This document shows, piece by piece, positions 1 to 43,257 of a stretch of 64,000 nt of DNA (position 1 is the first letter of the stretch; each line of letters begins with the position of its first letter). The DNA is from Mobula hypostoma (Eukaryota). The DNA lies in the NCBI RefSeq assembly GCF_963921235.1, contig NC_086104.1:63426001-63490000 (forward strand), read 5' to 3'. Under the pieces are notes generated by a model, which was not told the DNA's origin, made no database searches, and was given only the letters and a program-made list of their open reading frames with translations. A program made the translations under genes and the position numbers.

Positions 1-1852
1 TCTGGAGAGACACTGGAGCTTGTCAGTCATTGATCTTAAAGAGTGTGTTAGACTTTAGTTCAGAGACTCAGACTGGGGAGGTCAGGCTGATAAAAGGCAT
101 TGGAAAAGGGACCGAAGCAGTACCTTTGCACCAGATACACCTAAAAAGTGACTTGGTCTCCGGACCGGTCACGATTGGGGTGAGGCCCGAACTACCGATG
201 GAAGACGTGGAGGTCTTACTCGGTAATGACCTTGCCGGCGGAGAGGTGTACCCAGCAGTAAGATTGACAAGCCAGCCTGCCAGCATTGAGGCCCCGCCCA
301 TGGACTCACAGGTTTATCCCGTTTGCGCAGTGACTCGGTGCATGTCCAGAAAGGCTGCCGAAGTGAATATAGATTTAGCTGAGATGTTTTTACCAGCCTT
401 GTACCAGGAGGAGTTAGAAAGTGAGAAGCAGCGTAGTGAAACAGAAGGAGGTAGACTTATCATTAGCAAGGAAGGAATTTATACAGGCACAGGAGCGAGA
501 CGAGGAGCTGATGGTTTTGACGGAGACAGCTCTCTCCGAAGCAGAATTAAAAAGGGAGCCAGTGGGCTATTATGTGAAGGAGGGAGTACTAAGGAGGAAA
601 TGGAGACCAAGTACCCTGCCCGCAGATGAGGAATGGGGGGTGGTGCCAAAAATTTATGGGGATGAGATTCTTAACCTGGCCCACAAGATACCCCTCGGTG
701 GACATTTTAGGGTAAGGAAGACAGTCGATAGAATCATGAAAGAGTTTTACTGGCCACACAGGAGGAAGGATGCTATTGACTATTGTAGACGTGAGCTAAC
801 ACAGTTACAGGCTATTGATATGCTAACAGCTTGCCACAATAGGCGAGCAGACCTAGTCAGTGTTATCACAAAAATTAATGAGGCTAGGGTGCCACCTGAT
901 AAGGGGAAAACCCATTTTGAAAAGATAAGTATGGTGCCGACCAGATGGGAGAACTCTATTGTTTTGGCCAACTTTGCTGATGAGTTCTCTCACTTAACCC
1001 CTGAACAGAGCGAGCCGCTGATAAAGCTAACTAACCGGCACGCAGATGTATGTCCGGATGTCCCGAGGCGATGCTAAGAGCCGGGACATGGTGTTGTTGT
1101 CACATCAGGTCAGCCTAGTAAGCAACACCCCTATAAGATGATTAAATCAGTGACAAAAGGGCTAAGGAACGCTGAAGCGTATATTGACGATTTAGTGGTC
1201 TGGAGTGACACGTGGGAGGAGCACATTGTGGCAGTAGAGGAACTGTTTAAAAAGCTGGTTGAAACCAGTCTGACAGTGAACCTCGCAAAAAGTGAATTCA
1301 GCCACGCGAACGTCACTTATATGGGATTATGGGATTTGTGGTAGGACAGGGGCAGCTGGTTCTGATGCAGGCTAAGGTGCGGGCTATCTCTGAAGTCCTC
1401 ACCCCGACAGACAAGAGAGCCCTGAGAAGGTTCTTGGGGATGGTGGGGTACTATCGGAAGTTTTGCAAAAACTTTGCGGATATCACCTTCCCTCTTACTA
1501 AGCTCTTGCCAAAGAATGCTAAGTCTGTGTGGGATGACCTTTGTTATATGTGTCCGGGACGGAAACCACTGAGAATTTACACTGATCACAACCCATTAGT
1601 GTTTTTGGCCACTATGAAGGATAAAAACAAAAGGTTACTCAGTTGGAGCCTGGTCTTAGAGGGACTTGATATTAAAATAAAACATATAAAAGGAACGGAA
1701 AATGTGATTGCTGACTGTCTGTCGAGGTGTTGAATACTTAAAAGTTCTCTGTATTAGCCGAATAGCTGATGACCCTGTATATTAGTGTGTATCTAATAAT
1801 GTATTCATGCCTATAATTTTTACCCCGGTAAAAATCCTTTGAAGGATAGGGG
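1..1852 (+). mobile_element. Gypsy LTR retrotransposon internal region, Gmr1-type domain order (protease - integrase Zn finger - RT - RNase H), internally deleted and frameshifted
   Basis: ORF 30-629 has LLGNDLAGG (protease C-terminal region). ORF 421-1077 has the integrase zinc-binding segment AHKIPLGGH...FYWP...DYCR. ORF 1138-1344 has YIDD (RT). ORF 1329-1733 has FLGMVGYYRKF and YTDHNPLVF...IKHIKGTENVIADCLSR* (RNase H end). Polypurine tract gaaggatagggg at 1841-1852. Confidence 0.9.
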
Positions 1853-2683
1853 TGTGACGACAAACCAAGTTATCAGAAGATTGATGCTGATGAGAGAGAT
1901 AAGGGAGACAATGGAGAAATATTCAAAATGCTAATAAGAGAGAAGAGAGAGTTTAACGAGAAAGAAATACATTTCAGAATATTGACAGACTGGTTGCTTT
2001 GAACCTGAACTGTTTGAAGTTTGATGGACAGGCGATACCCCAGCAGGGGGATAAAAAGAACAGGTTTGCTAAGGCATGACACACACCACAAGATCACGAG
2101 ATAACGAGGCCCTGGAAGAGCGGAGTGCCCCCACAAATTGGTGTGAGTTGGAGGTCTGGTTCGAGGGAACCAACCATAGACTGACAGGGTGAAAAGGGAC
2201 GATCGGCGGGAACCTGGTGTGTGTCTCCGCCCTTGCCTGGGTGCCGGGTTCACCGCGGAAGAAAGGTCGTATCCGGAACAGAGGGGTCACAGTCGGTGAC
2301 CACAGAAGACATAAAAGGGTTCGCCCGAAAGCTAACTGCGAAGAACATCAAAGGTCTGTTTGAATCAAAATTTGCATTCTCTCTCTCTCTCCAACGGCAC
2401 AACAGCGATTACTGCGAACTGTACTAAGCTGAACTGAACTCTGCGTCACTTGAGACTGATCATTTTACCCCTAGACTGCCATAGAGCTTGATTGATTCCT
2501 ATTACCCTAGTTCTGTGTACATGTGTGTTTTATCATTGCTAACCTGTTGCATTTATATCCTTACGATTAGAGTACTGTGTTACTTATTTCTTTAATAAAA
2601 CTTTACTAGTTTCTGTTAAACCAGACTCCAACTAAGTGGTCCATTTCTGCTGGTTTGGCAACCCAGTTACGGGGTACGTAACA
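1853..2683 (+). mobile_element. 3' LTR of the Gmr1-type element (831 bp)
   Basis: Starts TGTGACG directly after the PPT and ends CGTAACA (TG...CA with imperfect terminal inverted repeat). AATAAA near 2594. Confidence 0.8.
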
Positions 2684-2916
2684 CTAAAAAGGAATTCGAT
2701 TTTTGTTTGATATCTGAGATTTGGAACCTAAACAGAATGTTGGATTTTTGAATTGTTCTTACTCATGTAAATATTTTGTATATATAGTTTTTTTTATATA
2801 TAAACAAAACTTACCTCTAGAAGTATGTGTTTTCTATTCACTGCCTCCTTCCAATACCTAAAGCTTCTGATGACCCACTAGCACCTAGTACAACGTAATT
2901 TTATTTTCTCATAAAG

Positions 2917-3560
2917 AGTGTGACGACCAGTCACACAAGATAAGAACGGTGCTACACAGGTGTCACACCTAGGTGACAGTCACCTTGTTCCTGGTGAGAG
3001 GTAATGGAATTAGAACACATTAATTCAATAAAACAAACCCTGGGATTTACCAAATGTGCATTACAACTACAATAATGTCTTCATTTTGACGCTGTTTGAT
3101 TAACATTGGAATTAAATGATCAAATTTCAATACATGTCACCAAAAAGTACAGAATATCTTTACACACCCTACCAGGTAAAACTTATTCATAAACATTACA
3201 AGAGGCAATGTTGTTGCAATTCTTACTCACACATGTTTTATGTACATGTGTTTTAACAAGGGTGTTACCAAATATTTTCTTCTTTGGTTGCTGACATGAA
3301 TGAATGAAGTGTGGAGATGTATATTATCAGGTTTTGTGAAATTATTGACACCGAAAAACTAACACCAAATCTTGTGAAGAATGTTTTGTAGATTGGGAAC
3401 AAAGGCTGTTGACATCTGTTTATCTAAAGTCAACAAATGTATAGATATGACTCCCCTATCATGTCATCCTTACCTGCACATGGAATTGCTAAAACTAGGT
3501 AAACAAGGAACACACACATATTTATCAAGCTAAGCCTGAAGTACTGCTTTCATCTGTGTT
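2917..3560. promoter_or_regulatory. Candidate T-box/Fox enhancer (putative Brachyury autoregulatory element)
   Basis: TCACACCTAGGTGACA at 2963-2978 is 14/16 to TCACACCTAGGTGTGA. Also AGGTGTCA 2958, AGGTGACAGTCACCT 2971-2985, AGTGTGA 2917, TCACAC 2931, GGTGTTA 3261, TGACACC 3346, TAACACC 3360, and Fox-type GTAAACA 3499 and TGTTTAT near 3417. PRR18/SFT2D1 synteny with TBXT supports the context. Confidence 0.5.
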
Positions 3561-5350
3561 TGTCCAATAGCGGCACTTTGTCATTTAACAAAAAAGGACG
3601 AGCTCCAAGGAGAAAAATCTATGTTAAATTTCAGTGCGCTACTGAAGGAGTCTGCACCATCATTCAGGTAGAATGCTAAATTAAGCTCCCTTCTTAAGGT
3701 CCCTCTTAAATGGCAGTAAAAGTTCACGTGACATTAAAATAATGATTGATTCTCTGCTCAATTCTTAACAGTAAGGCCACAGTCGGTCCATGTGGGTAGC
3801 AACGTCTCTCATCCCATTACACTGAGTACTGGCACCTGGCAAGGCTGCATGCTCAGCCCGCTGCTGTTTGCACTTCTGATGCATAACTGGGTCGCAGGTT
3901 CCAGCTCAAACCGTGTCATCAGGTTTGCAGATGATACAACTGTGGTTGGTCTTATCAAGAATGCTGACGAGATGGAGTATAGAGAGGAAGTAGAGTGGCT
4001 GGTGGATTGGTGTGAGAAGGACAACCTAAGCCTGTATGTGGAGAAGACACAGGAAATCATTGTAGGTTTCAGGAAGGTGCAGACAGACTGTCCCCCTCTG
4101 CAAATACTTGGCTCCTCCATAGAGAGAGTTAAGTGCATCAAGTTCCTGGGACCTCACACAACGGATCATCTCTCCTGGAACCTCCATATCACCTCCTTGA
4201 AAAAGAAGGCACAGCAGTACCTCCACTTCCTAAGAACATTGCGGCAAGCAAGGCTCCCTGAAACCCCTTCCCCCATATTAACTGCATTTTACAGGAGCAA
4301 CATTAGCACCTTCCTAACAAGCTGCATCACCATCTGGTATGGGAGCAGTTGAGCATCGGACCAGAAGGCCCTACAAATGACTGTGGGAATAGCTGAGAGG
4401 ATCATAGGAGTCTCCCTACCATCCAACGGGGCATTTACCAGGAGTCCTGCAAACGCAGAGCCTTTGGTATTATTAAGGATCCCACCCATCCATTCAGCAT
4501 CCTCTTTGACTTTCTACCATCAAGCAGGAGAATATGATGCATAAAAACAAGAAATGTCAGGATGAGAAACAGTTTCTACTGCCAGGCCATTAGGCTTCTG
4601 AACTCCTGGACGCATCATATTCGAAGTGTCACTGGTTAATCTGTTCTGTACCTTCCAATATTTAAAATGAATGCACTTTAGTTTGCTACTTTTGTGTGAT
4701 TCATCTGTAGATTTTATCTGTACCTTCATAAGTTATTGTGTGTTATATGTACTACTGTGCTTTACACCCTGGTTCGAAGAAACATCTTGTTTCTATATAT
4801 ATATAATATGGTTATATATATGTATATAGTTAAACGACAATAAACTTGACTTTGAATATTACTGTGCTGTCTGTTTCACAGTGTTCACTTCACGTGCATA
4901 TTGTTGAGGCTTGAAAGGCCTTCGGAAACAGAACTCAGTCCCCTTACAAAGAAAGTTGCAAAGGGAAAAAGTTGCAGAACCTCATAGATATGAGAGAAGA
5001 GTAATAAATAAACTTTATATATCAAAAATTTCTTCAGAATTAAGTATCATGTTTAGAAGAAAATCAAGAGCTGCTTAGAAAATACATCCACAGATTAGTT
5101 GGTGACAAAATGATACAAACTAAATAACATTTTGCTTCGTAGTTAGAACCCATGCAATGGTAGTAATCTGATGGGTAATGCAAGTCCAAGAGTCAATCAT
5201 TTTTTTCCATCTAGTACTCAGATTAGGTGTTCTTTTGGGAACATTATGTGACTGGGTGTCATCTTCATCTTCCTGGTGTTCATGAAAGATTTGCTTTGTT
5301 TGGAATGTACTGTGAGGAGACCATCAGGCACACTCCAGGAAGAGGGCAGT
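2971..5350 (+). repeat. Local duplication, copy 1 (interrupted by a Rex1-type LINE)
   Basis: Collinear with 7798-9001. Exact shared runs include 3370-3399 = 8161-8190 and 3401-3441 = 8192-8232. Confidence 0.9.
3761..4856 (+). mobile_element. Rex1/Babar-type LINE, 5'-truncated (RT C-terminal half plus 3' UTR)
   Basis: QGCMLSPLLF...FADDTTVVGLI...KKAQQYLHFLR. Tail aataaacttgactttga. The corresponding site in duplicate copy 2 (about 8418) is empty. Confidence 0.9.
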
Positions 5351-6126
5351 AGTGTCGCCATATAAGGCTCTTCAGAATAGATGAAACAAAAGTGGGCACT
5401 AACATGCATTTTAAAAGCCTCTCATTATCTTTTAATATTTTAGTAACACACTGTACATCAATATGCTAGGTAATGCTTCTGCACAGGTTTTTAAAATTTT
5501 TGGTTAATGAAACTCTGATTTCCTAATTTTCAGCTTTGTTAAATCAAACTGCACCCCAGATTTCTAATCAAAGAATATTTTTAATGCATATTTTTAAATG
5601 AGTATTTTAAAATGCAATTCACTTGCACTAGTACAGGAAGCATTTTGACCTCTTGGCTGGATGCAAATGAATGAAATTAGACCAAGTAATCCCTTTCAAA
5701 GCTACTGTAATTCTGAGTTCATTTATCACTCTGATCAACAACTGGTCCAAAACAAAAACTTCTCACTCTAAACTTGACTCAAATCCTAACATGTTATGAT
5801 CTATTCAAAAACTGTGACATCTGTGCCATTATTTAGAAGACTGTATGCAAAACAAAGCATCTGTATTTATTAGAACTGCTCTGTACAATAAATGAAAGGC
5901 TTCCATAAATATAGCACAGAGCTTCACAACCTTTTTCTCAGCAGGATCTCACTAAATAAATTAAATTTCTGTGATCCCAAAATGACACTAATCAGCCCTC
6001 CAGGTAAAATTACATTTAATTAAATTTAAGCTGAAATTGCACTGTCAAATATTTTTGCATACCTATTTTTGGGATATCCCCAAAGCAATTTATACTAATC
6101 AACATCCTTTTGAAATTAACTCTGTT

Positions 6127-6910: not shown

Positions 6911-7797
6911 GAAATTAACTCTGTTGTGGTTTAGTAATCACATTGGCAAATGCAAATATATATGTGAACAGAAAAGAACCAAGATTCCTCTGCTGTAGTT
7001 TTGTCACATTGTGCATACATGTGACTTAACTGGGCTGTTACCAAATATTCAATGTATTGAGTGAGCATATTGATAAATAAAGCTTGGCAGGCAGACTTGC
7101 ACTAATCATACTTAGACAAGTTAAATTACTTTTTTAAAAATCCTAAGAAGAATGCATTACAAATTTGGAATCTGTATATAATCATATTATGACCAACCCA
7201 GATTTTTCTTCTGTAGCACTTTAATAAAATTAGGGTGAGATTTGTACAGTGTTCACCATGCTTTACTCACCCCCTAAATCAGACACTATTTTAAGAGTGT
7301 AGATAGTTGAAATCATACCTTCTACTTCAAGAGCTTAGATCTACACAGTTTTTTTTCTACAAGTATTGAGGAGTGCTGGACTATTTGATCTAGTGTCTTG
7401 GCATTAAATAGTTGCCAGTATCCACACTTTTAGATGGACAGCAAAATCCTTTGCCATATAAACACAATCTGGTTATAACATTGCTGCTTGTGGGAGTAGC
7501 CTGTGCTCAAAATGGCTGTTGCATTTCACGCACATTTCAGTTTCACCTTTTGGATATGGACACCCTGTAAGAAATAATTGTAATGCCCTGAGCAGATTTC
7601 TACAGCTACGCTGTGAGGTATCTTTATTTTAGCAGTTTTCTGTAAAAGCAACGTGTCCCGCTAGTATAAGTGTTTTGGCTTTGGCTAAAGATAAGGAGCC
7701 ATGTTTTCCAACTTAGGAATGTGGTGTCAGACAGTCAGGGTTGTCCCAAAGTGGCTACGTGAGGAAGTATCAGAGACAGATGGCATCTTGATGGCTG

Positions 7798-9001
7798 AGG
7801 TGACAGTCACCTTCTTTCTGCACTAGAGGTCATGGAATTTGAACAACTTTAATTTGATAATACAAACCCTGCGTTACAACTGCAATAATGTCTTCATTTT
7901 GATGCTGCTTAATTAACATTGGAGTTAATTTGTCAAATTTTAATGCATGTCACCAAAAAGCAATGAATGTTCATAGACACTACAAGAGGTAATGTTTTTG
8001 CATTAACTTACTCACAGACGTTTTATGTACATGTGTTTTAATAAGGGAGTGACCAAACATTTTCTACTTTGGTTGATGACATGAATGAAATGAGACTTGG
8101 AGATGTATACAGTATCATCATATTTTGTGAAATGATTGATACTGAAAAGCTAATGCCCGATCTTGTGAAGAATGTTTTGTAGATTGGGAAGAAAGGCTGT
8201 TGACATCTGTTTATCTAAAGTCAACAAATGTACACATAGATATGACTACCTTATCATGTCATCCTTCAAGTAAAAAAATCTATGTTGAAATCTCAGTGCA
8301 CTGCTGAAAGAGTCTACATCATATTTAAGGTGGGACGTTGAAATGAGGTCCTTTCTTATTCTCTCAAACGGCAGTAAAAGTTCATGTGACATTAAAATCA
8401 CAATGCATTCTCCGCTCACTATTACTGTGCTGCATGTTTCCCAATAAATTAGCAGCTGTGCTTCCAATGTTTACAGTTCACGTGCAAAATGTTGAGGCTT
8501 GAAATCAGTTCCTTTTTAAAAATGTTGCAAAGAACAAAGAAGAGGCAGATCCTCATAGATATGAGACAAGAGTAATAAATAAACTTTATATATCAACAAT
8601 ATCTTCAGAATTAAATATAATATTTAGAAGAAAGTCAAGAACTGCTTGGAAAAACATCCAAAGATTAGTTGGTGACAAAATGATACAAACTAGATAACAT
8701 TTTGTGTCGTAGTTAGAACCCATGCAATGGTAGTAATCTGGTGGGTAATGTAAGTCCAACAGTCAATCATCTTTATGCATCCAGTACTCAGATTAGGTGT
8801 TCTTTTGAGAACATTATGGTTCTGGATGTCGTATTCATGGTGTGCATGAAGGAATTGCTTTGTTTGGATTGTGCTGTAAGGACAGCATCAGGCACACTCT
8901 ACAGCAGTGGTTCCCAACCTGACACCCGTAGACTCCTTGCTGTGGTGTTGGTCCATGGCATAAAAAAGGTTGGGAACCCCTGCTCTACAGGAATGGGGCA
9001 G
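7798..9001 (+). repeat. Local duplication, copy 2 (interrupted by a hAT MITE)
   Basis: Begins with AGGTGACAGTCACCT as copy 1 does and stays collinear to about 9000. It lacks the Rex1 insertion and the segment at about 3473-3605. Confidence 0.9.
8905..8982. mobile_element. hAT (Charlie-like) MITE, 78 bp
   Basis: TIRs CAGTGGTTCCCAACCT / AGGTTGGGAACCCCTG. 8-bp TSD CTCTACAG at 8897-8904 and 8983-8990. Confidence 0.9.
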
Positions 9002-42654: not shown

Positions 42655-43257
42655 ATGAAGACAGACATCCCGCCCAGAGCGGCGGTACCTTTCCCTCCGA
42701 TCCGCCAAGCCGGGTGCTGTCCTGGCAGGCAGCAGGAGCCCCAGCGACCGCTGAGAAAGAAAGTGCAGCCGCCGCAAAATTTCTCCCACTCATGGCCCAA
42801 GGCGGGATTCCAGCTTGGGGGCCGCCGGCCGCAGCCCCGCCTGCTTGAGCCAAGGTTAACGGGCAGCTTGTGTGTCAGCGTGCTGGCTTCCGCCAAGCAC
42901 TCGGACCGCACCGGGCAGCCGGACGGTAGCGCGGGGGAGTGCTTCTCGCTCAGCCTCACTCCCGAGGCCGTGCAGGTCATCCAGAAGCGCAATTTGGAGC
43001 GGCAGCAGCTGGCGGGCCGGACAAAGGAGAAGGCGGCGACTCGGTGTCCGGCCGCACCACCCTCGTCCGATATCAGGAAGCTGCTGAAAATCTCGCTGCT
43101 AAACGACCAACACAAATATGACGACGTGGAATATGAGGAGGGCGACGGGCCGCCCGACCGCTCGGTCCTGCAGAAATGTCTGGAGTGGCTGGAGGGAGTG
43201 GAGAGCGCTCGCGGGCCCGTGGGCAAGCTGGCAAGGTTACCCCAGCTGGCCAACTAG
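42655..43257 (+). CDS. PRR18: Proline-rich protein 18 (single coding exon, 200 aa)
   Basis: Family motifs PFPP, SHSWP, FSLSLTPEAVQVIQKRNLE and DIRKLLKISLLNDQHKYDDVEYEE...VLQKCLEWLEGVESA. GC/CpG-rich, in-frame stop upstream at 42613, and adjacent to SFT2D1 as in other vertebrates. Confidence 0.9.
   Translation: MKTDIPPRAAVPFPPIRQAGCCPGRQQEPQRPLRKKVQPPQNFSHSWPKAGFQLGGRRPQPRLLEPRLTGSLCVSVLASAKHSDRTGQPDGSAGECFSLSLTPEAVQVIQKRNLERQQLAGRTKEKAATRCPAAPPSSDIRKLLKISLLNDQHKYDDVEYEEGDGPPDRSVLQKCLEWLEGVESARGPVGKLARLPQLAN

What the first reader, a model, noticed from the sequence alone, without database searches (positions are those of the whole stretch)
2917..3560. Dense Brachyury-type T-box site cluster in the inferred TBXT upstream region
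Seen: within 70 bp there are AGTGTGA...TCACAC (inverted), AGGTGTCA, TCACACCTAGGTGACA (14/16 to the Brachyury palindrome TCACACCTAGGTGTGA) and the palindrome AGGTGACAGTCACCT. Three more half-sites (3261, 3346, 3360) and Fox-type sites (3417, 3499) follow. Known: PRR18 and SFT2D1 flank TBXT in mammals, and Brachyury notochord enhancers in that interval are T-box-dependent and autoregulatory. Inference: this is a cartilaginous-fish Brachyury notochord enhancer, with TBXT to the left of the window.
Basis: partly seen in the sequence, partly recalled or inferred. Interest (0 to 1): 0.8.

Follow-up and report, generated by a model that had tools for sequence, protein, structure and literature searches.

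The report
Transposon end mimicking Brachyury binding sites
The apparent cluster of Brachyury (T-box) binding sites upstream of tbxt is the end of a common mobile-element repeat and the scar of its insertion, not a conserved notochord enhancer; the genuine conserved T3/TNE enhancer lies 55 kb away.

Summary

Window 2683-2967 is the last 285 bp of a dispersed LTR-like repeat of about 1.35 kb. Its last 29 bp match 292 genome sites at two mismatches or fewer (control 0). All 26 other copies inspected carry a form of the GTGTGAC..GTCACAC hairpin, and 21 carry the AGGTGT[T/C]A half-site at the ACAGGTGTTACA end.

The "14/16 Brachyury palindrome" is a junction. It consists of the repeat's end (..TCACA), a 4-bp target-site duplication (CCTA) and older flank (GGTGACA). 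A local paralog at 7780-7813 keeps the empty site.

In three related species the repeat part shows roughly 100-fold or more the depth of the neighbouring single-copy DNA.

The ortholog of the published T3/TNE enhancer is at C22:63,373,4xx-63,373,9xx. That is 108 kb 5' of tbxt and 52 kb outside the window.

The remaining half-sites are 2-mismatch matches, only mildly enriched, and they vary between paralogs and relatives.

Verdict: an ordinary transposon relic. One loose end remains: a 72-bp block (3369-3440) is 71/72 identical to its paralog.

The parts
1..2684 (+). Younger LTR retroelement nested inside the older repeat. It holds an internal region with pol remnants and a 292-bp 3' LTR at 2393-2684. 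Its 5' LTR lies left of the window at C22:63,424,271-63,424,561.
   Evidence: The 5' and 3' LTRs are 96.6% identical. Pfam Integrase_H2C2 matches the ORF at 421-1077 and RT_RNaseH the ORF at 1329-1733. The genome search gave 7757 first-look candidates, with scored copies at 85-93% identity ending at 2683-2686. The LTR part alone gave 3460 or more candidates at 96-99%.
2683..2967 (+). Last 285 bp of an older dispersed LTR-like repeat of about 1.35 kb (termini TGTAAC...GTTACA, 4-bp target-site duplications, no ORF). It contains most of the 'T-box cluster'.
   Evidence: It is 75-88% identical to 26 other copies, which all end at the same base. Full copies share 5' TGTAACCCAGGT and 3' ACAGGTGTTACA with target-site duplications TCAG and CCAT. 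The last 29 bp have 292 genome matches at two mismatches or fewer, control 0. The rest of this copy lies at window -3855..-2948 and -2317..-2268.
2917..2936 (+). Terminal hairpin of the repeat: stem GTGTGAC (2918-2924) pairs with GTCACAC (2930-2936), loop GACCA.
   Evidence: A version of the hairpin is present in all 26 other copies; 22 of them keep an exact AGTCACAC arm, and several carry G-to-A or T-to-C changes that would keep pairing as G-U in RNA. It is predicted as a 7-bp stem.
2958..2967 (+). The repeat's 3' terminus, AGGTGTCACA (family form AGGTGTTACA). It supplies the half-site AGGTGTCA and the left arm TCACA of the apparent palindrome.
   Evidence: The other copies end in ACAGGTGT[T/C]ACA or a close variant; 21 of 26 hold an exact AGGTGT[T/C]A.
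2968..2971 (+). Target-site duplication CCTA. Its partner TCTA is at C22:63,422,141-63,422,144, immediately 5' of the repeat's TGTAAC start.
   Evidence: Flanks read ..GATGGTCTA|TGTAAC.. and ..GTGTCACA|CCTAGGTGAC.. The uninterrupted paralog reads ..GATGGCTGAGGTGAC...
2972..2986 (+). Pre-existing palindrome AGGTGACAGTCACCT in the flank. It has two mismatches per half-site to the T-box consensus, and its arms face the opposite way to the Brachyury palindrome.
   Evidence: It is identical in the local paralog at 7799-7813. No difference is listed at 2976-3018 in the contigs of related species.
2971..5335 (+). Copy A of a local duplication of about 1.1 kb, in segments 2971-3471, 3603-3760 and 4886-5335. 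It is interrupted by a 132-bp stretch absent from copy B and by a high-copy repeat at about 3760-4886.
   Evidence: Self-BLAST gives 77-83% identity; alignment. Apart from the paralog it is unique in the genome. Depth in relatives is 4-42 in the unique parts against 1,700-190,000 at 3728-4855.
7745..8899 (+). Copy B of the local duplication. It carries the empty site for the old repeat's insertion at about 7793-7798.
   Evidence: Homology continues 50 bp to the left of the insertion point at 82%.
3369..3440 (+). A 72-bp block that is 71/72 identical between the paralogs (copy B 8160-8231), against about 84% overall. It contains the Fox-like TGTTTAT at 3417 and the inverted repeat TGTTGAC..GTCAACA.
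   Evidence: Only 10 of 5000 column shuffles reach 71/72. There is no Rfam match and no fold better than shuffles. The one paralog difference (3400 C) is G in three relatives, and the Fox-like site is changed at 3419 in one relative.
42655..43257 (+). PRR18 coding ORF (200 aa), which confirms the locus.
   Evidence: Pfam PF15671, 95.9 bits, E 4.5e-27; the only genome hit for that family.

Best explanation
The motif cluster at 2917-2986 is a by-product of transposon history, not a selected array of Brachyury sites.

An LTR-like repeat of about 1.35 kb (termini TGTAAC...GTTACA) inserted into copy A of a local duplication and made a 4-bp target-site duplication (TCTA/CCTA). A younger LTR retroelement and other insertions later split this copy, so only its last 285 bp (2683-2967) lie next to the flank.

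The repeat's own 3' end supplies the GTGTGAC-N5-GTCACAC hairpin and the terminal AGGTGT(C/T)ACA. The 14/16 'Brachyury palindrome' arose by chance where ...TCACA met CCTA plus the older flank GGTGACAGTCACCT.

The weaker half-sites and Fox-like sites further right are close to what this AT-rich single-copy DNA yields by chance. The most likely function is none.

Shown: repeat identity, copy number, insertion junction, empty site, presence of the insertion in related species, and the position of the real T3 enhancer. Inferred: lack of enhancer function.
For: 1. Window 2886-2967 matches hundreds of dispersed copies: 407 first-look candidates, with the 38 scored dispersed copies at 80-90%. With flanks, 2683-2967 aligns to 26 copies, all ending at the same base and followed by unrelated sequence.
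2. All 26 copies carry a form of the hairpin (22 with an exact AGTCACAC arm) and 21 hold an exact AGGTGT[T/C]A at the ACAGGTGT[T/C]ACA terminus. The last 29 bp have 292 genome matches at two mismatches or fewer, against 0 for the reversed control.
3. Full copies have TGTAAC...GTTACA ends and 4-bp target-site duplications. The window copy's 5' portion lies 6.8 kb upstream and is flanked by TCTA. The paralog at 7780-7813 keeps the uninterrupted site GATGG-CTGA-GGTGACAGTCACC.
4. In contigs of three related species, depth over 2694-2975 is 866-21,216 against 4-42 over 2976-3727. Contigs spanning 2932-3260 and 2912-3342 bridge the junction, so the insertion is shared but of repeat origin.
5. The skate T3 core sequences from the supplement of PMC10584899 match once in the genome, at C22:63,373,760. 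Two further collinear cores lie beside it with 3 mismatches each. This is 107.7 kb 5' of the tbxt ATG and 52 kb outside the window.
6. The sites at 3260, 3346 and 3360 are 2-mismatch matches. They differ in copy B, and 3346 also changes in relatives (3343, 3349, 3352). Their count of 11 is only at the 4.3% tail.
Against: - The junction does hold the only perfect TCACACCT in the 64 kb, next to a second half-site in the spacing of the Brachyury palindrome, and it lies in the tbxt regulatory interval. Transposon-derived transcription-factor sites are sometimes co-opted.
- The insertion and the flank palindrome are retained in at least two related species.
- Fox-like motifs are mildly over-represented, 4 in 700 bp against about 1 per kb in the window, and a 72-bp block is unusually well kept between the paralogs.
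- No chromatin, ChIP or reporter data could be consulted.
- Conservation in more distant sharks, rays or chimaeras could not be tested with these tools.
Confidence: 0.86

Rival explanations
1. Co-opted transposon: the junction-born near-palindrome TCACACCTAGGTGACA, together with the repeat's half-sites, has been recruited as a lineage-restricted Brachyury-responsive element. It would act on tbxt (163 kb away) or on PRR18 (39 kb away).
For: The junction has the only perfect T-box half-site in the window, with a palindromic partner. The motif density is in the top 0.44% of 70-bp windows. It lies inside the tbxt-PRR18 interval. The insertion is shared with at least two related species.
Against: Hundreds of other copies carry the same hairpin and terminal half-site with similar motif counts. 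This copy is as diverged from other family members (75-88%) as they are from one another. It has been broken up by later nested insertions. Six equally dense places occur in 64 kb. No expression or chromatin evidence exists.
Confidence: 0.05
2. A real but T-box-independent regulatory or RNA element lies in the adjacent single-copy duplicated unit, centred on the 72-bp block at 3369-3440 (paralog 8160-8231). The T-box cluster would be irrelevant to it.
For: The block is 71/72 identical between paralogs against about 84% overall, and only 10 of 5000 shuffles reach this. Only two differences are listed at 3353-3451 in three relatives, against about one every 14 bp at 3019-3352 (that list is truncated). 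The block contains a Fox-like site and an inverted repeat.
Against: A short gene-conversion tract between the paralogs would give the same picture. There is no Rfam match and no fold better than shuffles (z = +0.85 and -0.91). No other organism holds the block's exact 31-letter words, and no RNA run holds it. The Fox-like core is changed (3419 T>C) in one relative, and the Sox-like AACAAAG is specific to this species' copy A.
Confidence: 0.08
3. One reading: an ancient cartilaginous-fish Brachyury notochord enhancer, autoregulatory through T-box sites and related to T3/TNE, C or I.
For: The genomic neighbourhood is correct. Published enhancers of this gene depend on T-box motifs (PMC10584899).
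Against: The core is a transposon terminus plus its junction, absent from the paralogous empty site. T3 is found elsewhere. The published positions put C between T3 and the gene and I downstream of it, so both lie farther from the window than T3. The segment matches nothing else in the genome.
Confidence: 0.01

Closest known systems
TBXT/Brachyury notochord enhancers T3 (containing the mouse TNE), C and I (Kemmler et al. 2023, PMC10584899; mouse TNE2 in PMC10651091)
   Same: It lies on the 5' side of tbxt in the tbxt-PRR18 interval and contains T-box-like motifs, as the published autoregulatory enhancers do.
   Different: There is no sequence relationship. The T3 ortholog of this genome is at C22:63,373,4xx-63,373,9xx, 55 kb nearer the gene, and is about 91% identical to thorny skate T3 over three collinear cores. 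The published enhancers are single-copy and conserved across jawed vertebrates, with conservation centred on the T-box motifs. Here the motifs come from a repeat and an insertion junction.
Solo LTRs of LTR retrotransposons or endogenous retroviruses
   Same: TG...CA termini with a short terminal inverted repeat (TGTAAC/GTTACA), 4-bp target-site duplications, a length of about 1.2-1.4 kb without ORFs, hundreds to thousands of dispersed copies, and nesting of younger elements.
   Different: No full-length element with paired LTRs, primer-binding site, polypurine tract and gag-pol was found for this family; one paired hit on C40 proved to be a full copy plus a fragment. A non-autonomous terminal-inverted-repeat DNA element with 4-bp duplications is therefore not excluded.
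Palindromic Brachyury binding site TCACACCTAGGTGTGA
   Same: TCACACCTAGGTGACA at 2963-2978 matches 14 of 16 positions with the same arm orientation.
   Different: The right arm has two mismatches in its half-site (GACA for GTGA). The sequence is a chimera of transposon end, target-site duplication and flank. Binding was not tested.

Membership tests
Conserved TBXT notochord enhancers (T3/TNE, C, I) | Located in the regulatory landscape of TBXT | tested here: met
   The site is 162.9 kb 5' of the tbxt ATG and 39 kb from PRR18 on the same contig.
Conserved TBXT notochord enhancers (T3/TNE, C, I) | Sequence orthology to T3, C or I of other jawed vertebrates | tested here: not met
   The skate T3 cores hit only C22:63,373,760 and its neighbours and do not occur in the window. 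Window 2880-3760 matches only repeat copies and one local paralog in the genome. My two guessed cores for C and I found nothing anywhere in the genome, so C and I were not located. Their published positions lie nearer to or beyond the gene.
Conserved TBXT notochord enhancers (T3/TNE, C, I) | Single-copy sequence with deep conservation centred on the T-box motifs | tested here: not met
   The core motifs lie in a high-copy repeat. The junction is absent from the paralogous empty site. Outlying half-sites differ in the paralog and in relatives. Conservation beyond close relatives was not testable.
Conserved TBXT notochord enhancers (T3/TNE, C, I) | T-box-dependent notochord reporter activity; Brachyury occupancy and open chromatin in embryos | not testable with these tools
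   No ATAC, ChIP or embryo RNA runs were offered. The RNA-like runs of this species hold none of the stretch.
LTR-type dispersed repeat (solo LTR) | TG...CA termini with a short terminal inverted repeat | tested here: met
   5' TGTAACCCAGGT and 3' ACAGGTGTTACA in L006, L007, L008 and the window copy.
LTR-type dispersed repeat (solo LTR) | Short target-site duplication of fixed length | tested here: met
   The duplication is 4 bp: TCAG (L006), CCAT (L007), AACG/AATG (L008) and TCTA/CCTA (window copy), with an empty site in the paralog.
LTR-type dispersed repeat (solo LTR) | Many dispersed copies with a common 3' end | tested here: met
   292 matches to the last 29 bp at two mismatches or fewer, control 0. 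All 26 copies end at the same base.
LTR-type dispersed repeat (solo LTR) | Full-length relatives with two LTRs flanking primer-binding site, gag-pol and polypurine tract | tested here: inconclusive
   No ORFs occur in 1.4-kb copies. The one candidate pair on C40 is a full copy plus a 155-bp fragment, not a provirus. No systematic search was done.
Palindromic Brachyury binding site | Two inverted AGGTGTGA half-sites abutting as TCACACCT-AGGTGTGA | tested here: inconclusive
   The left arm is perfect and the right arm has 2 of 8 mismatches. Protein binding cannot be tested here.

The most novel reading that the evidence does not exclude
A transposon insertion created, at its junction with the host DNA, a near-perfect palindromic Brachyury site inside the tbxt regulatory landscape. 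This lineage-restricted site, shared by several related elasmobranch species, would have been co-opted as an extra autoregulatory input to tbxt. It might work with the neighbouring paralog-conserved 72-bp block that carries a Fox-like motif.
Probability: 0.05. Interest if true: 0.5.

Novelty: not a real feature. Interest (0 to 1): 0.1.

Why it matters
As it stands this is a cautionary case. Motif clusters read from raw sequence can be the conserved termini of mobile elements, and palindromic transcription-factor sites can arise at insertion junctions.

The useful by-products are three:
- The tbxt-PRR18-SFT2D1 locus is confirmed in this large elasmobranch-like genome.
- The real T3/TNE ortholog is placed 108 kb 5' of tbxt, which is where functional work on Brachyury regulation in this species should start.
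- The nested insertions and the local duplication can be ordered in time.

If the co-option reading were true, it would be an example of a transposon adding an autoregulatory site to a key developmental gene. Nothing here supports that reading beyond the letters themselves.

Tried and rejected
- **C and I orthologs.** I searched the genome with 33-letter stretches taken from the thorny skate C and I sequences in the paper's supplement, allowing 3 mismatches. Neither matched. The stretches were arbitrary picks and probably lie outside the conserved cores, so this says nothing about absence.
- **Other skate T3 stretches.** Three further stretches failed at 3 mismatches or fewer, apparently because of extra substitutions or an indel visible by eye. 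Three stretches matched.
- **LINE tail.** I first read the repeat as the 3' tail of a LINE. I dropped that when full copies showed a common 5' end, TG..CA termini and 4-bp duplications.
- **Full-length element.** A search for a full-length element of the old family through two nearby hits on C40 gave a full copy plus a fragment, not a provirus.
- **The 72-bp block and the cluster as RNA.** There is no Rfam match. The block does not fold better than shuffles. The cluster folds at z = -2.2 and -2.9 because of the repeat's hairpin and the palindromes.
- **Exact-word search for the block.** A search of public runs found only this species, but it was weak, with 7 sampled words.
- **Single-exon T-box ORFs.** The ORFs on C1 and C40 were checked as possible tbxt retrocopies. 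Their sequences look MGA-like from memory, not Brachyury-like, and were not pursued.
- **Position-weight matrix.** No JASPAR matrix was available offline, so motif scoring used mismatch counts to AGGTGTGA.

Full report
**Observation.**
- AGTGTGAC-GACCA-GTCACAC at 2917-2936
- AGGTGTCA at 2958
- TCACACCTAGGTGACA at 2963-2978
- AGGTGACAGTCACCT at 2972-2986
- weaker half-sites at 3260, 3346 and 3360
- Fox-like heptamers at 3417 and 3499

I scored the sequence against AGGTGTGA on both strands.
- Only the two overlapping sites at 2958 and 2963 have one mismatch or fewer. The perfect TCACACCT at 2963 is the only one in the 64-kb window.
- At two mismatches or fewer there are five hits in 2910-2990. 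This places the cluster in the top 0.44% of 70-bp windows, yet six places in the window are at least as dense.
- The remainder, 2987-3560, has 11 two-mismatch hits against 5.9 +/- 2.4 expected, a count that 4.3% of windows reach.

The enrichment is therefore real but modest.

**Locus.** The window is contig C22:63,426,001-63,490,000 of a 3.48-Gb genome.
- A Pfam T-box scan finds exons on the minus strand at C22:63,264,307-63,265,435.
- The neighbouring ORFs read MSSSGADSGKSGQYRVDHLLSAVE... and MFPVLKVNVSGLDPNAMYSF.... The second scores 202 bits to human TBXT and Xenopus Brachyury structures, against 90 bits to TBX5.
- The start codon is at C22:63,266,015, so window 2917 is 162.9 kb on the 5' side of tbxt.
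- PRR18 is the only genome hit for PF15671. It forms a 200-aa ORF at window 42655-43257 that scores 95.9 bits.
- A Got1/SFT2-like exon lies at C22:63,506,067, 16 kb beyond the window.

**The core cluster is the end of a dispersed repeat.**
- A whole-genome search with 2880-3600 returned 407 first-look candidates. Of the 40 scored, 38 were dispersed copies covering roughly 2880-2980 at 80-90% identity.
- With flanks included, 2683-2967 aligns at 75-88% to 26 fetched copies. All 26 stop at the same base and are followed by unrelated DNA.
- All 26 carry a form of the hairpin (AGAGTG[T/C]G..GAC.AGTCACAC); 22 keep an exact AGTCACAC arm. Twenty-one hold an exact AGGTGT[T/C]A within the terminal ACAGGTGT[T/C]ACA.
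- The last 29 bp have 292 genome matches at two mismatches or fewer, and none for the reversed control.
- Other copies average 2.4 T-box-like hits in their last 60 bp.
- Full copies are about 1.2-1.4 kb with no ORF. They begin TGTAACCCAGGT, end ACAGGTGTTACA, and are flanked by 4-bp duplications such as TCAG and CCAT.

This is the signature of a solo LTR. I found no full-length element, so the class is not settled.

**The "palindrome" is an insertion junction.**
- The window's copy of the repeat is complete but has been broken up. Its first 900 bp lie at window -3855..-2948, a 50-bp piece at -2317..-2268, and the last 285 bp at 2683-2967.
- Between the pieces sits a younger LTR retroelement. 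Its 292-bp LTRs are 96.6% identical to each other. The element as a whole has thousands of genomic copies at 85-93% identity, and its LTR alone matches thousands more at 96-99%. It also carries Integrase_H2C2 and RT_RNaseH remnants.
- The outer flanks read ...GATGGTCTA|TGTAAC... and ...GGTGTCACA|CCTAGGTGACAGTCACC...
- A local paralog at 7780-7813 reads ...GATGGCTGAGGTGACAGTCACC... without any insertion.

TCACACCTAGGTGACA is therefore repeat terminus plus target-site duplication plus older flank. The sequence did not exist before the insertion. The flank palindrome AGGTGACAGTCACCT predates the duplication, since it is identical in both paralogs. Each of its half-sites has two mismatches to the consensus, and its arms face the opposite way to the Brachyury palindrome.

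**Related species.** Six other organisms hold about 5% of the exact words of 2971-3760. I laid contigs from four of them on 2600-5400.
- In the three deeply sampled runs, summed depth is 866-21,216 over 2694-2975, against 4-42 over 2976-3727 and 7-63 over 4856-5400. The repeat is thus high-copy in the relatives too.
- Summed depth is 1,700-190,000 over 3728-4855, which marks another transposon inserted in copy A.
- Contigs spanning 2932-3260 and 2912-3342 bridge the junction, so the insertion is shared with at least two relatives.
- The single-copy part is about 92-93% identical between species, which indicates close relatives.
- The half-site at 3346 changes in the relatives (3343, 3349, 3352). 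The Fox-like core changes at 3419 in one relative. The C at 3400 is private to this species.
- The sites at 3260, 3346 and 3360 also differ in copy B.
- The Fox-like site at 3499 lies in a 132-bp stretch that copy B lacks.

**Where the known enhancers are.** Kemmler et al. 2023 (PMC10584899) reported T3, C and I in cartilaginous fishes, with conservation centred on the T-box motifs. They list coordinates for thorny skate and elephant shark.
- A 33-letter core of the skate T3 sequence from their supplement (identified as skate) matches once in this genome, at C22:63,373,760-63,373,792, with 3 mismatches. It does not occur in the window.
- Two further skate cores of 42 and 32 letters lie collinear beside it, each with 3 mismatches.
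- By eye the similarity runs over more than 350 bp.
- T3 is thus 107.7 kb 5' of the tbxt start codon, 52 kb left of the window and 55 kb from the finding.
- In the published maps C lies between T3 and the gene, and I lies downstream of the gene. I did not locate either.
- Window 2880-3760 matches nothing in the genome except repeat copies and its local paralog, so it is not a diverged copy of any of the three.

**The rest of the interval.** Window 2971-3471, 3603-3760 and 4886-5335 are paralogous to 7798-8899 at 77-83% and are otherwise unique. One 72-bp block (3369-3440, paralog 8160-8231) is 71/72 identical, and only 10 of 5000 shuffles reach this. It has no Rfam match, no significant fold, no RNA support, and no exact-word matches in other organisms. 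Either a gene-conversion tract or a small constrained element would explain it. I leave it as an open side observation.

**Verdict.** The palindrome is an insertion junction, and the bona fide T3 enhancer is elsewhere. I put 0.86 on "transposon relic, no enhancer function", about 0.05 on lineage-specific co-option of the junction site, and about 0.08 on an unrelated small functional element in the adjacent duplicated unit. Function itself was not tested, and only chromatin or reporter data could overturn this.

**Earlier scan notes.** Note s1-143697 describes the same local duplication on this window, and I confirmed it independently. The scan's other note on this stretch is the present finding itself.

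Noticed in passing
L052:1150-1700 (C22:63,373,409-63,373,959), outside the window: This is the ortholog of the published T3/TNE Brachyury notochord enhancer. Three collinear cores match thorny skate T3 with 3 mismatches each, including the conserved CCTCAC(T/G)GTTTGGTGACAT motif. It lies 107.7 kb 5' of the tbxt start codon.
   Followed up: partly
window 1-2684, extending left to C22:63,424,271: A near-complete young LTR retroelement of about 4.4 kb is nested in the older repeat. Its 292-bp LTRs are 96.6% identical, and it carries Integrase_H2C2 and RT_RNaseH remnants. The family gave 7757 first-look candidates at 85-93% identity, and the LTR alone matches at 96-99%.
   Followed up: partly
window 3369-3440 and 8160-8231: A 72-bp block is 71/72 identical between two local paralogs that are otherwise about 84% alike (10 of 5000 shuffles reach this). 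It contains TGTTTAT and the inverted repeat TGTTGAC..GTCAACA. It has no Rfam match, no significant fold and no RNA evidence. Gene conversion or constraint could each explain it.
   Followed up: partly
window ~3760-4886: A high-copy repeat is inserted in copy A of the local duplication and is absent from copy B. Summed contig depth in three related species is 1,700-190,000, against about 10-40 in the flanks.
   Followed up: no
window 42655-43257 (+): This is the PRR18 coding ORF of 200 aa (Pfam PF15671, 95.9 bits). It is the only PRR18-family hit in the genome.
   Followed up: partly
G000:C18:32,370,720-32,377,068 (-) and C18:32,414,173-32,414,367 (-): A second T-box gene has a Got1/SFT2-like exon about 37 kb away, mirroring the tbxt-SFT2D1 arrangement. 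This probably represents the paralogous TBX19-SFT2D2 pair; that naming is inferred from memory of human synteny and was not tested.
   Followed up: no
L009:1264-2376 (C1:93.43 Mb) and L010:1393-2085 (C40:0.66 Mb): Two ORFs (370 and 230 aa) each encode a whole T-box domain without introns (255 and 201 bits to PF00907). Their sequences look MGA-like rather than Brachyury-like, judged from memory and not tested. They are not tbxt retrocopies.
   Followed up: partly
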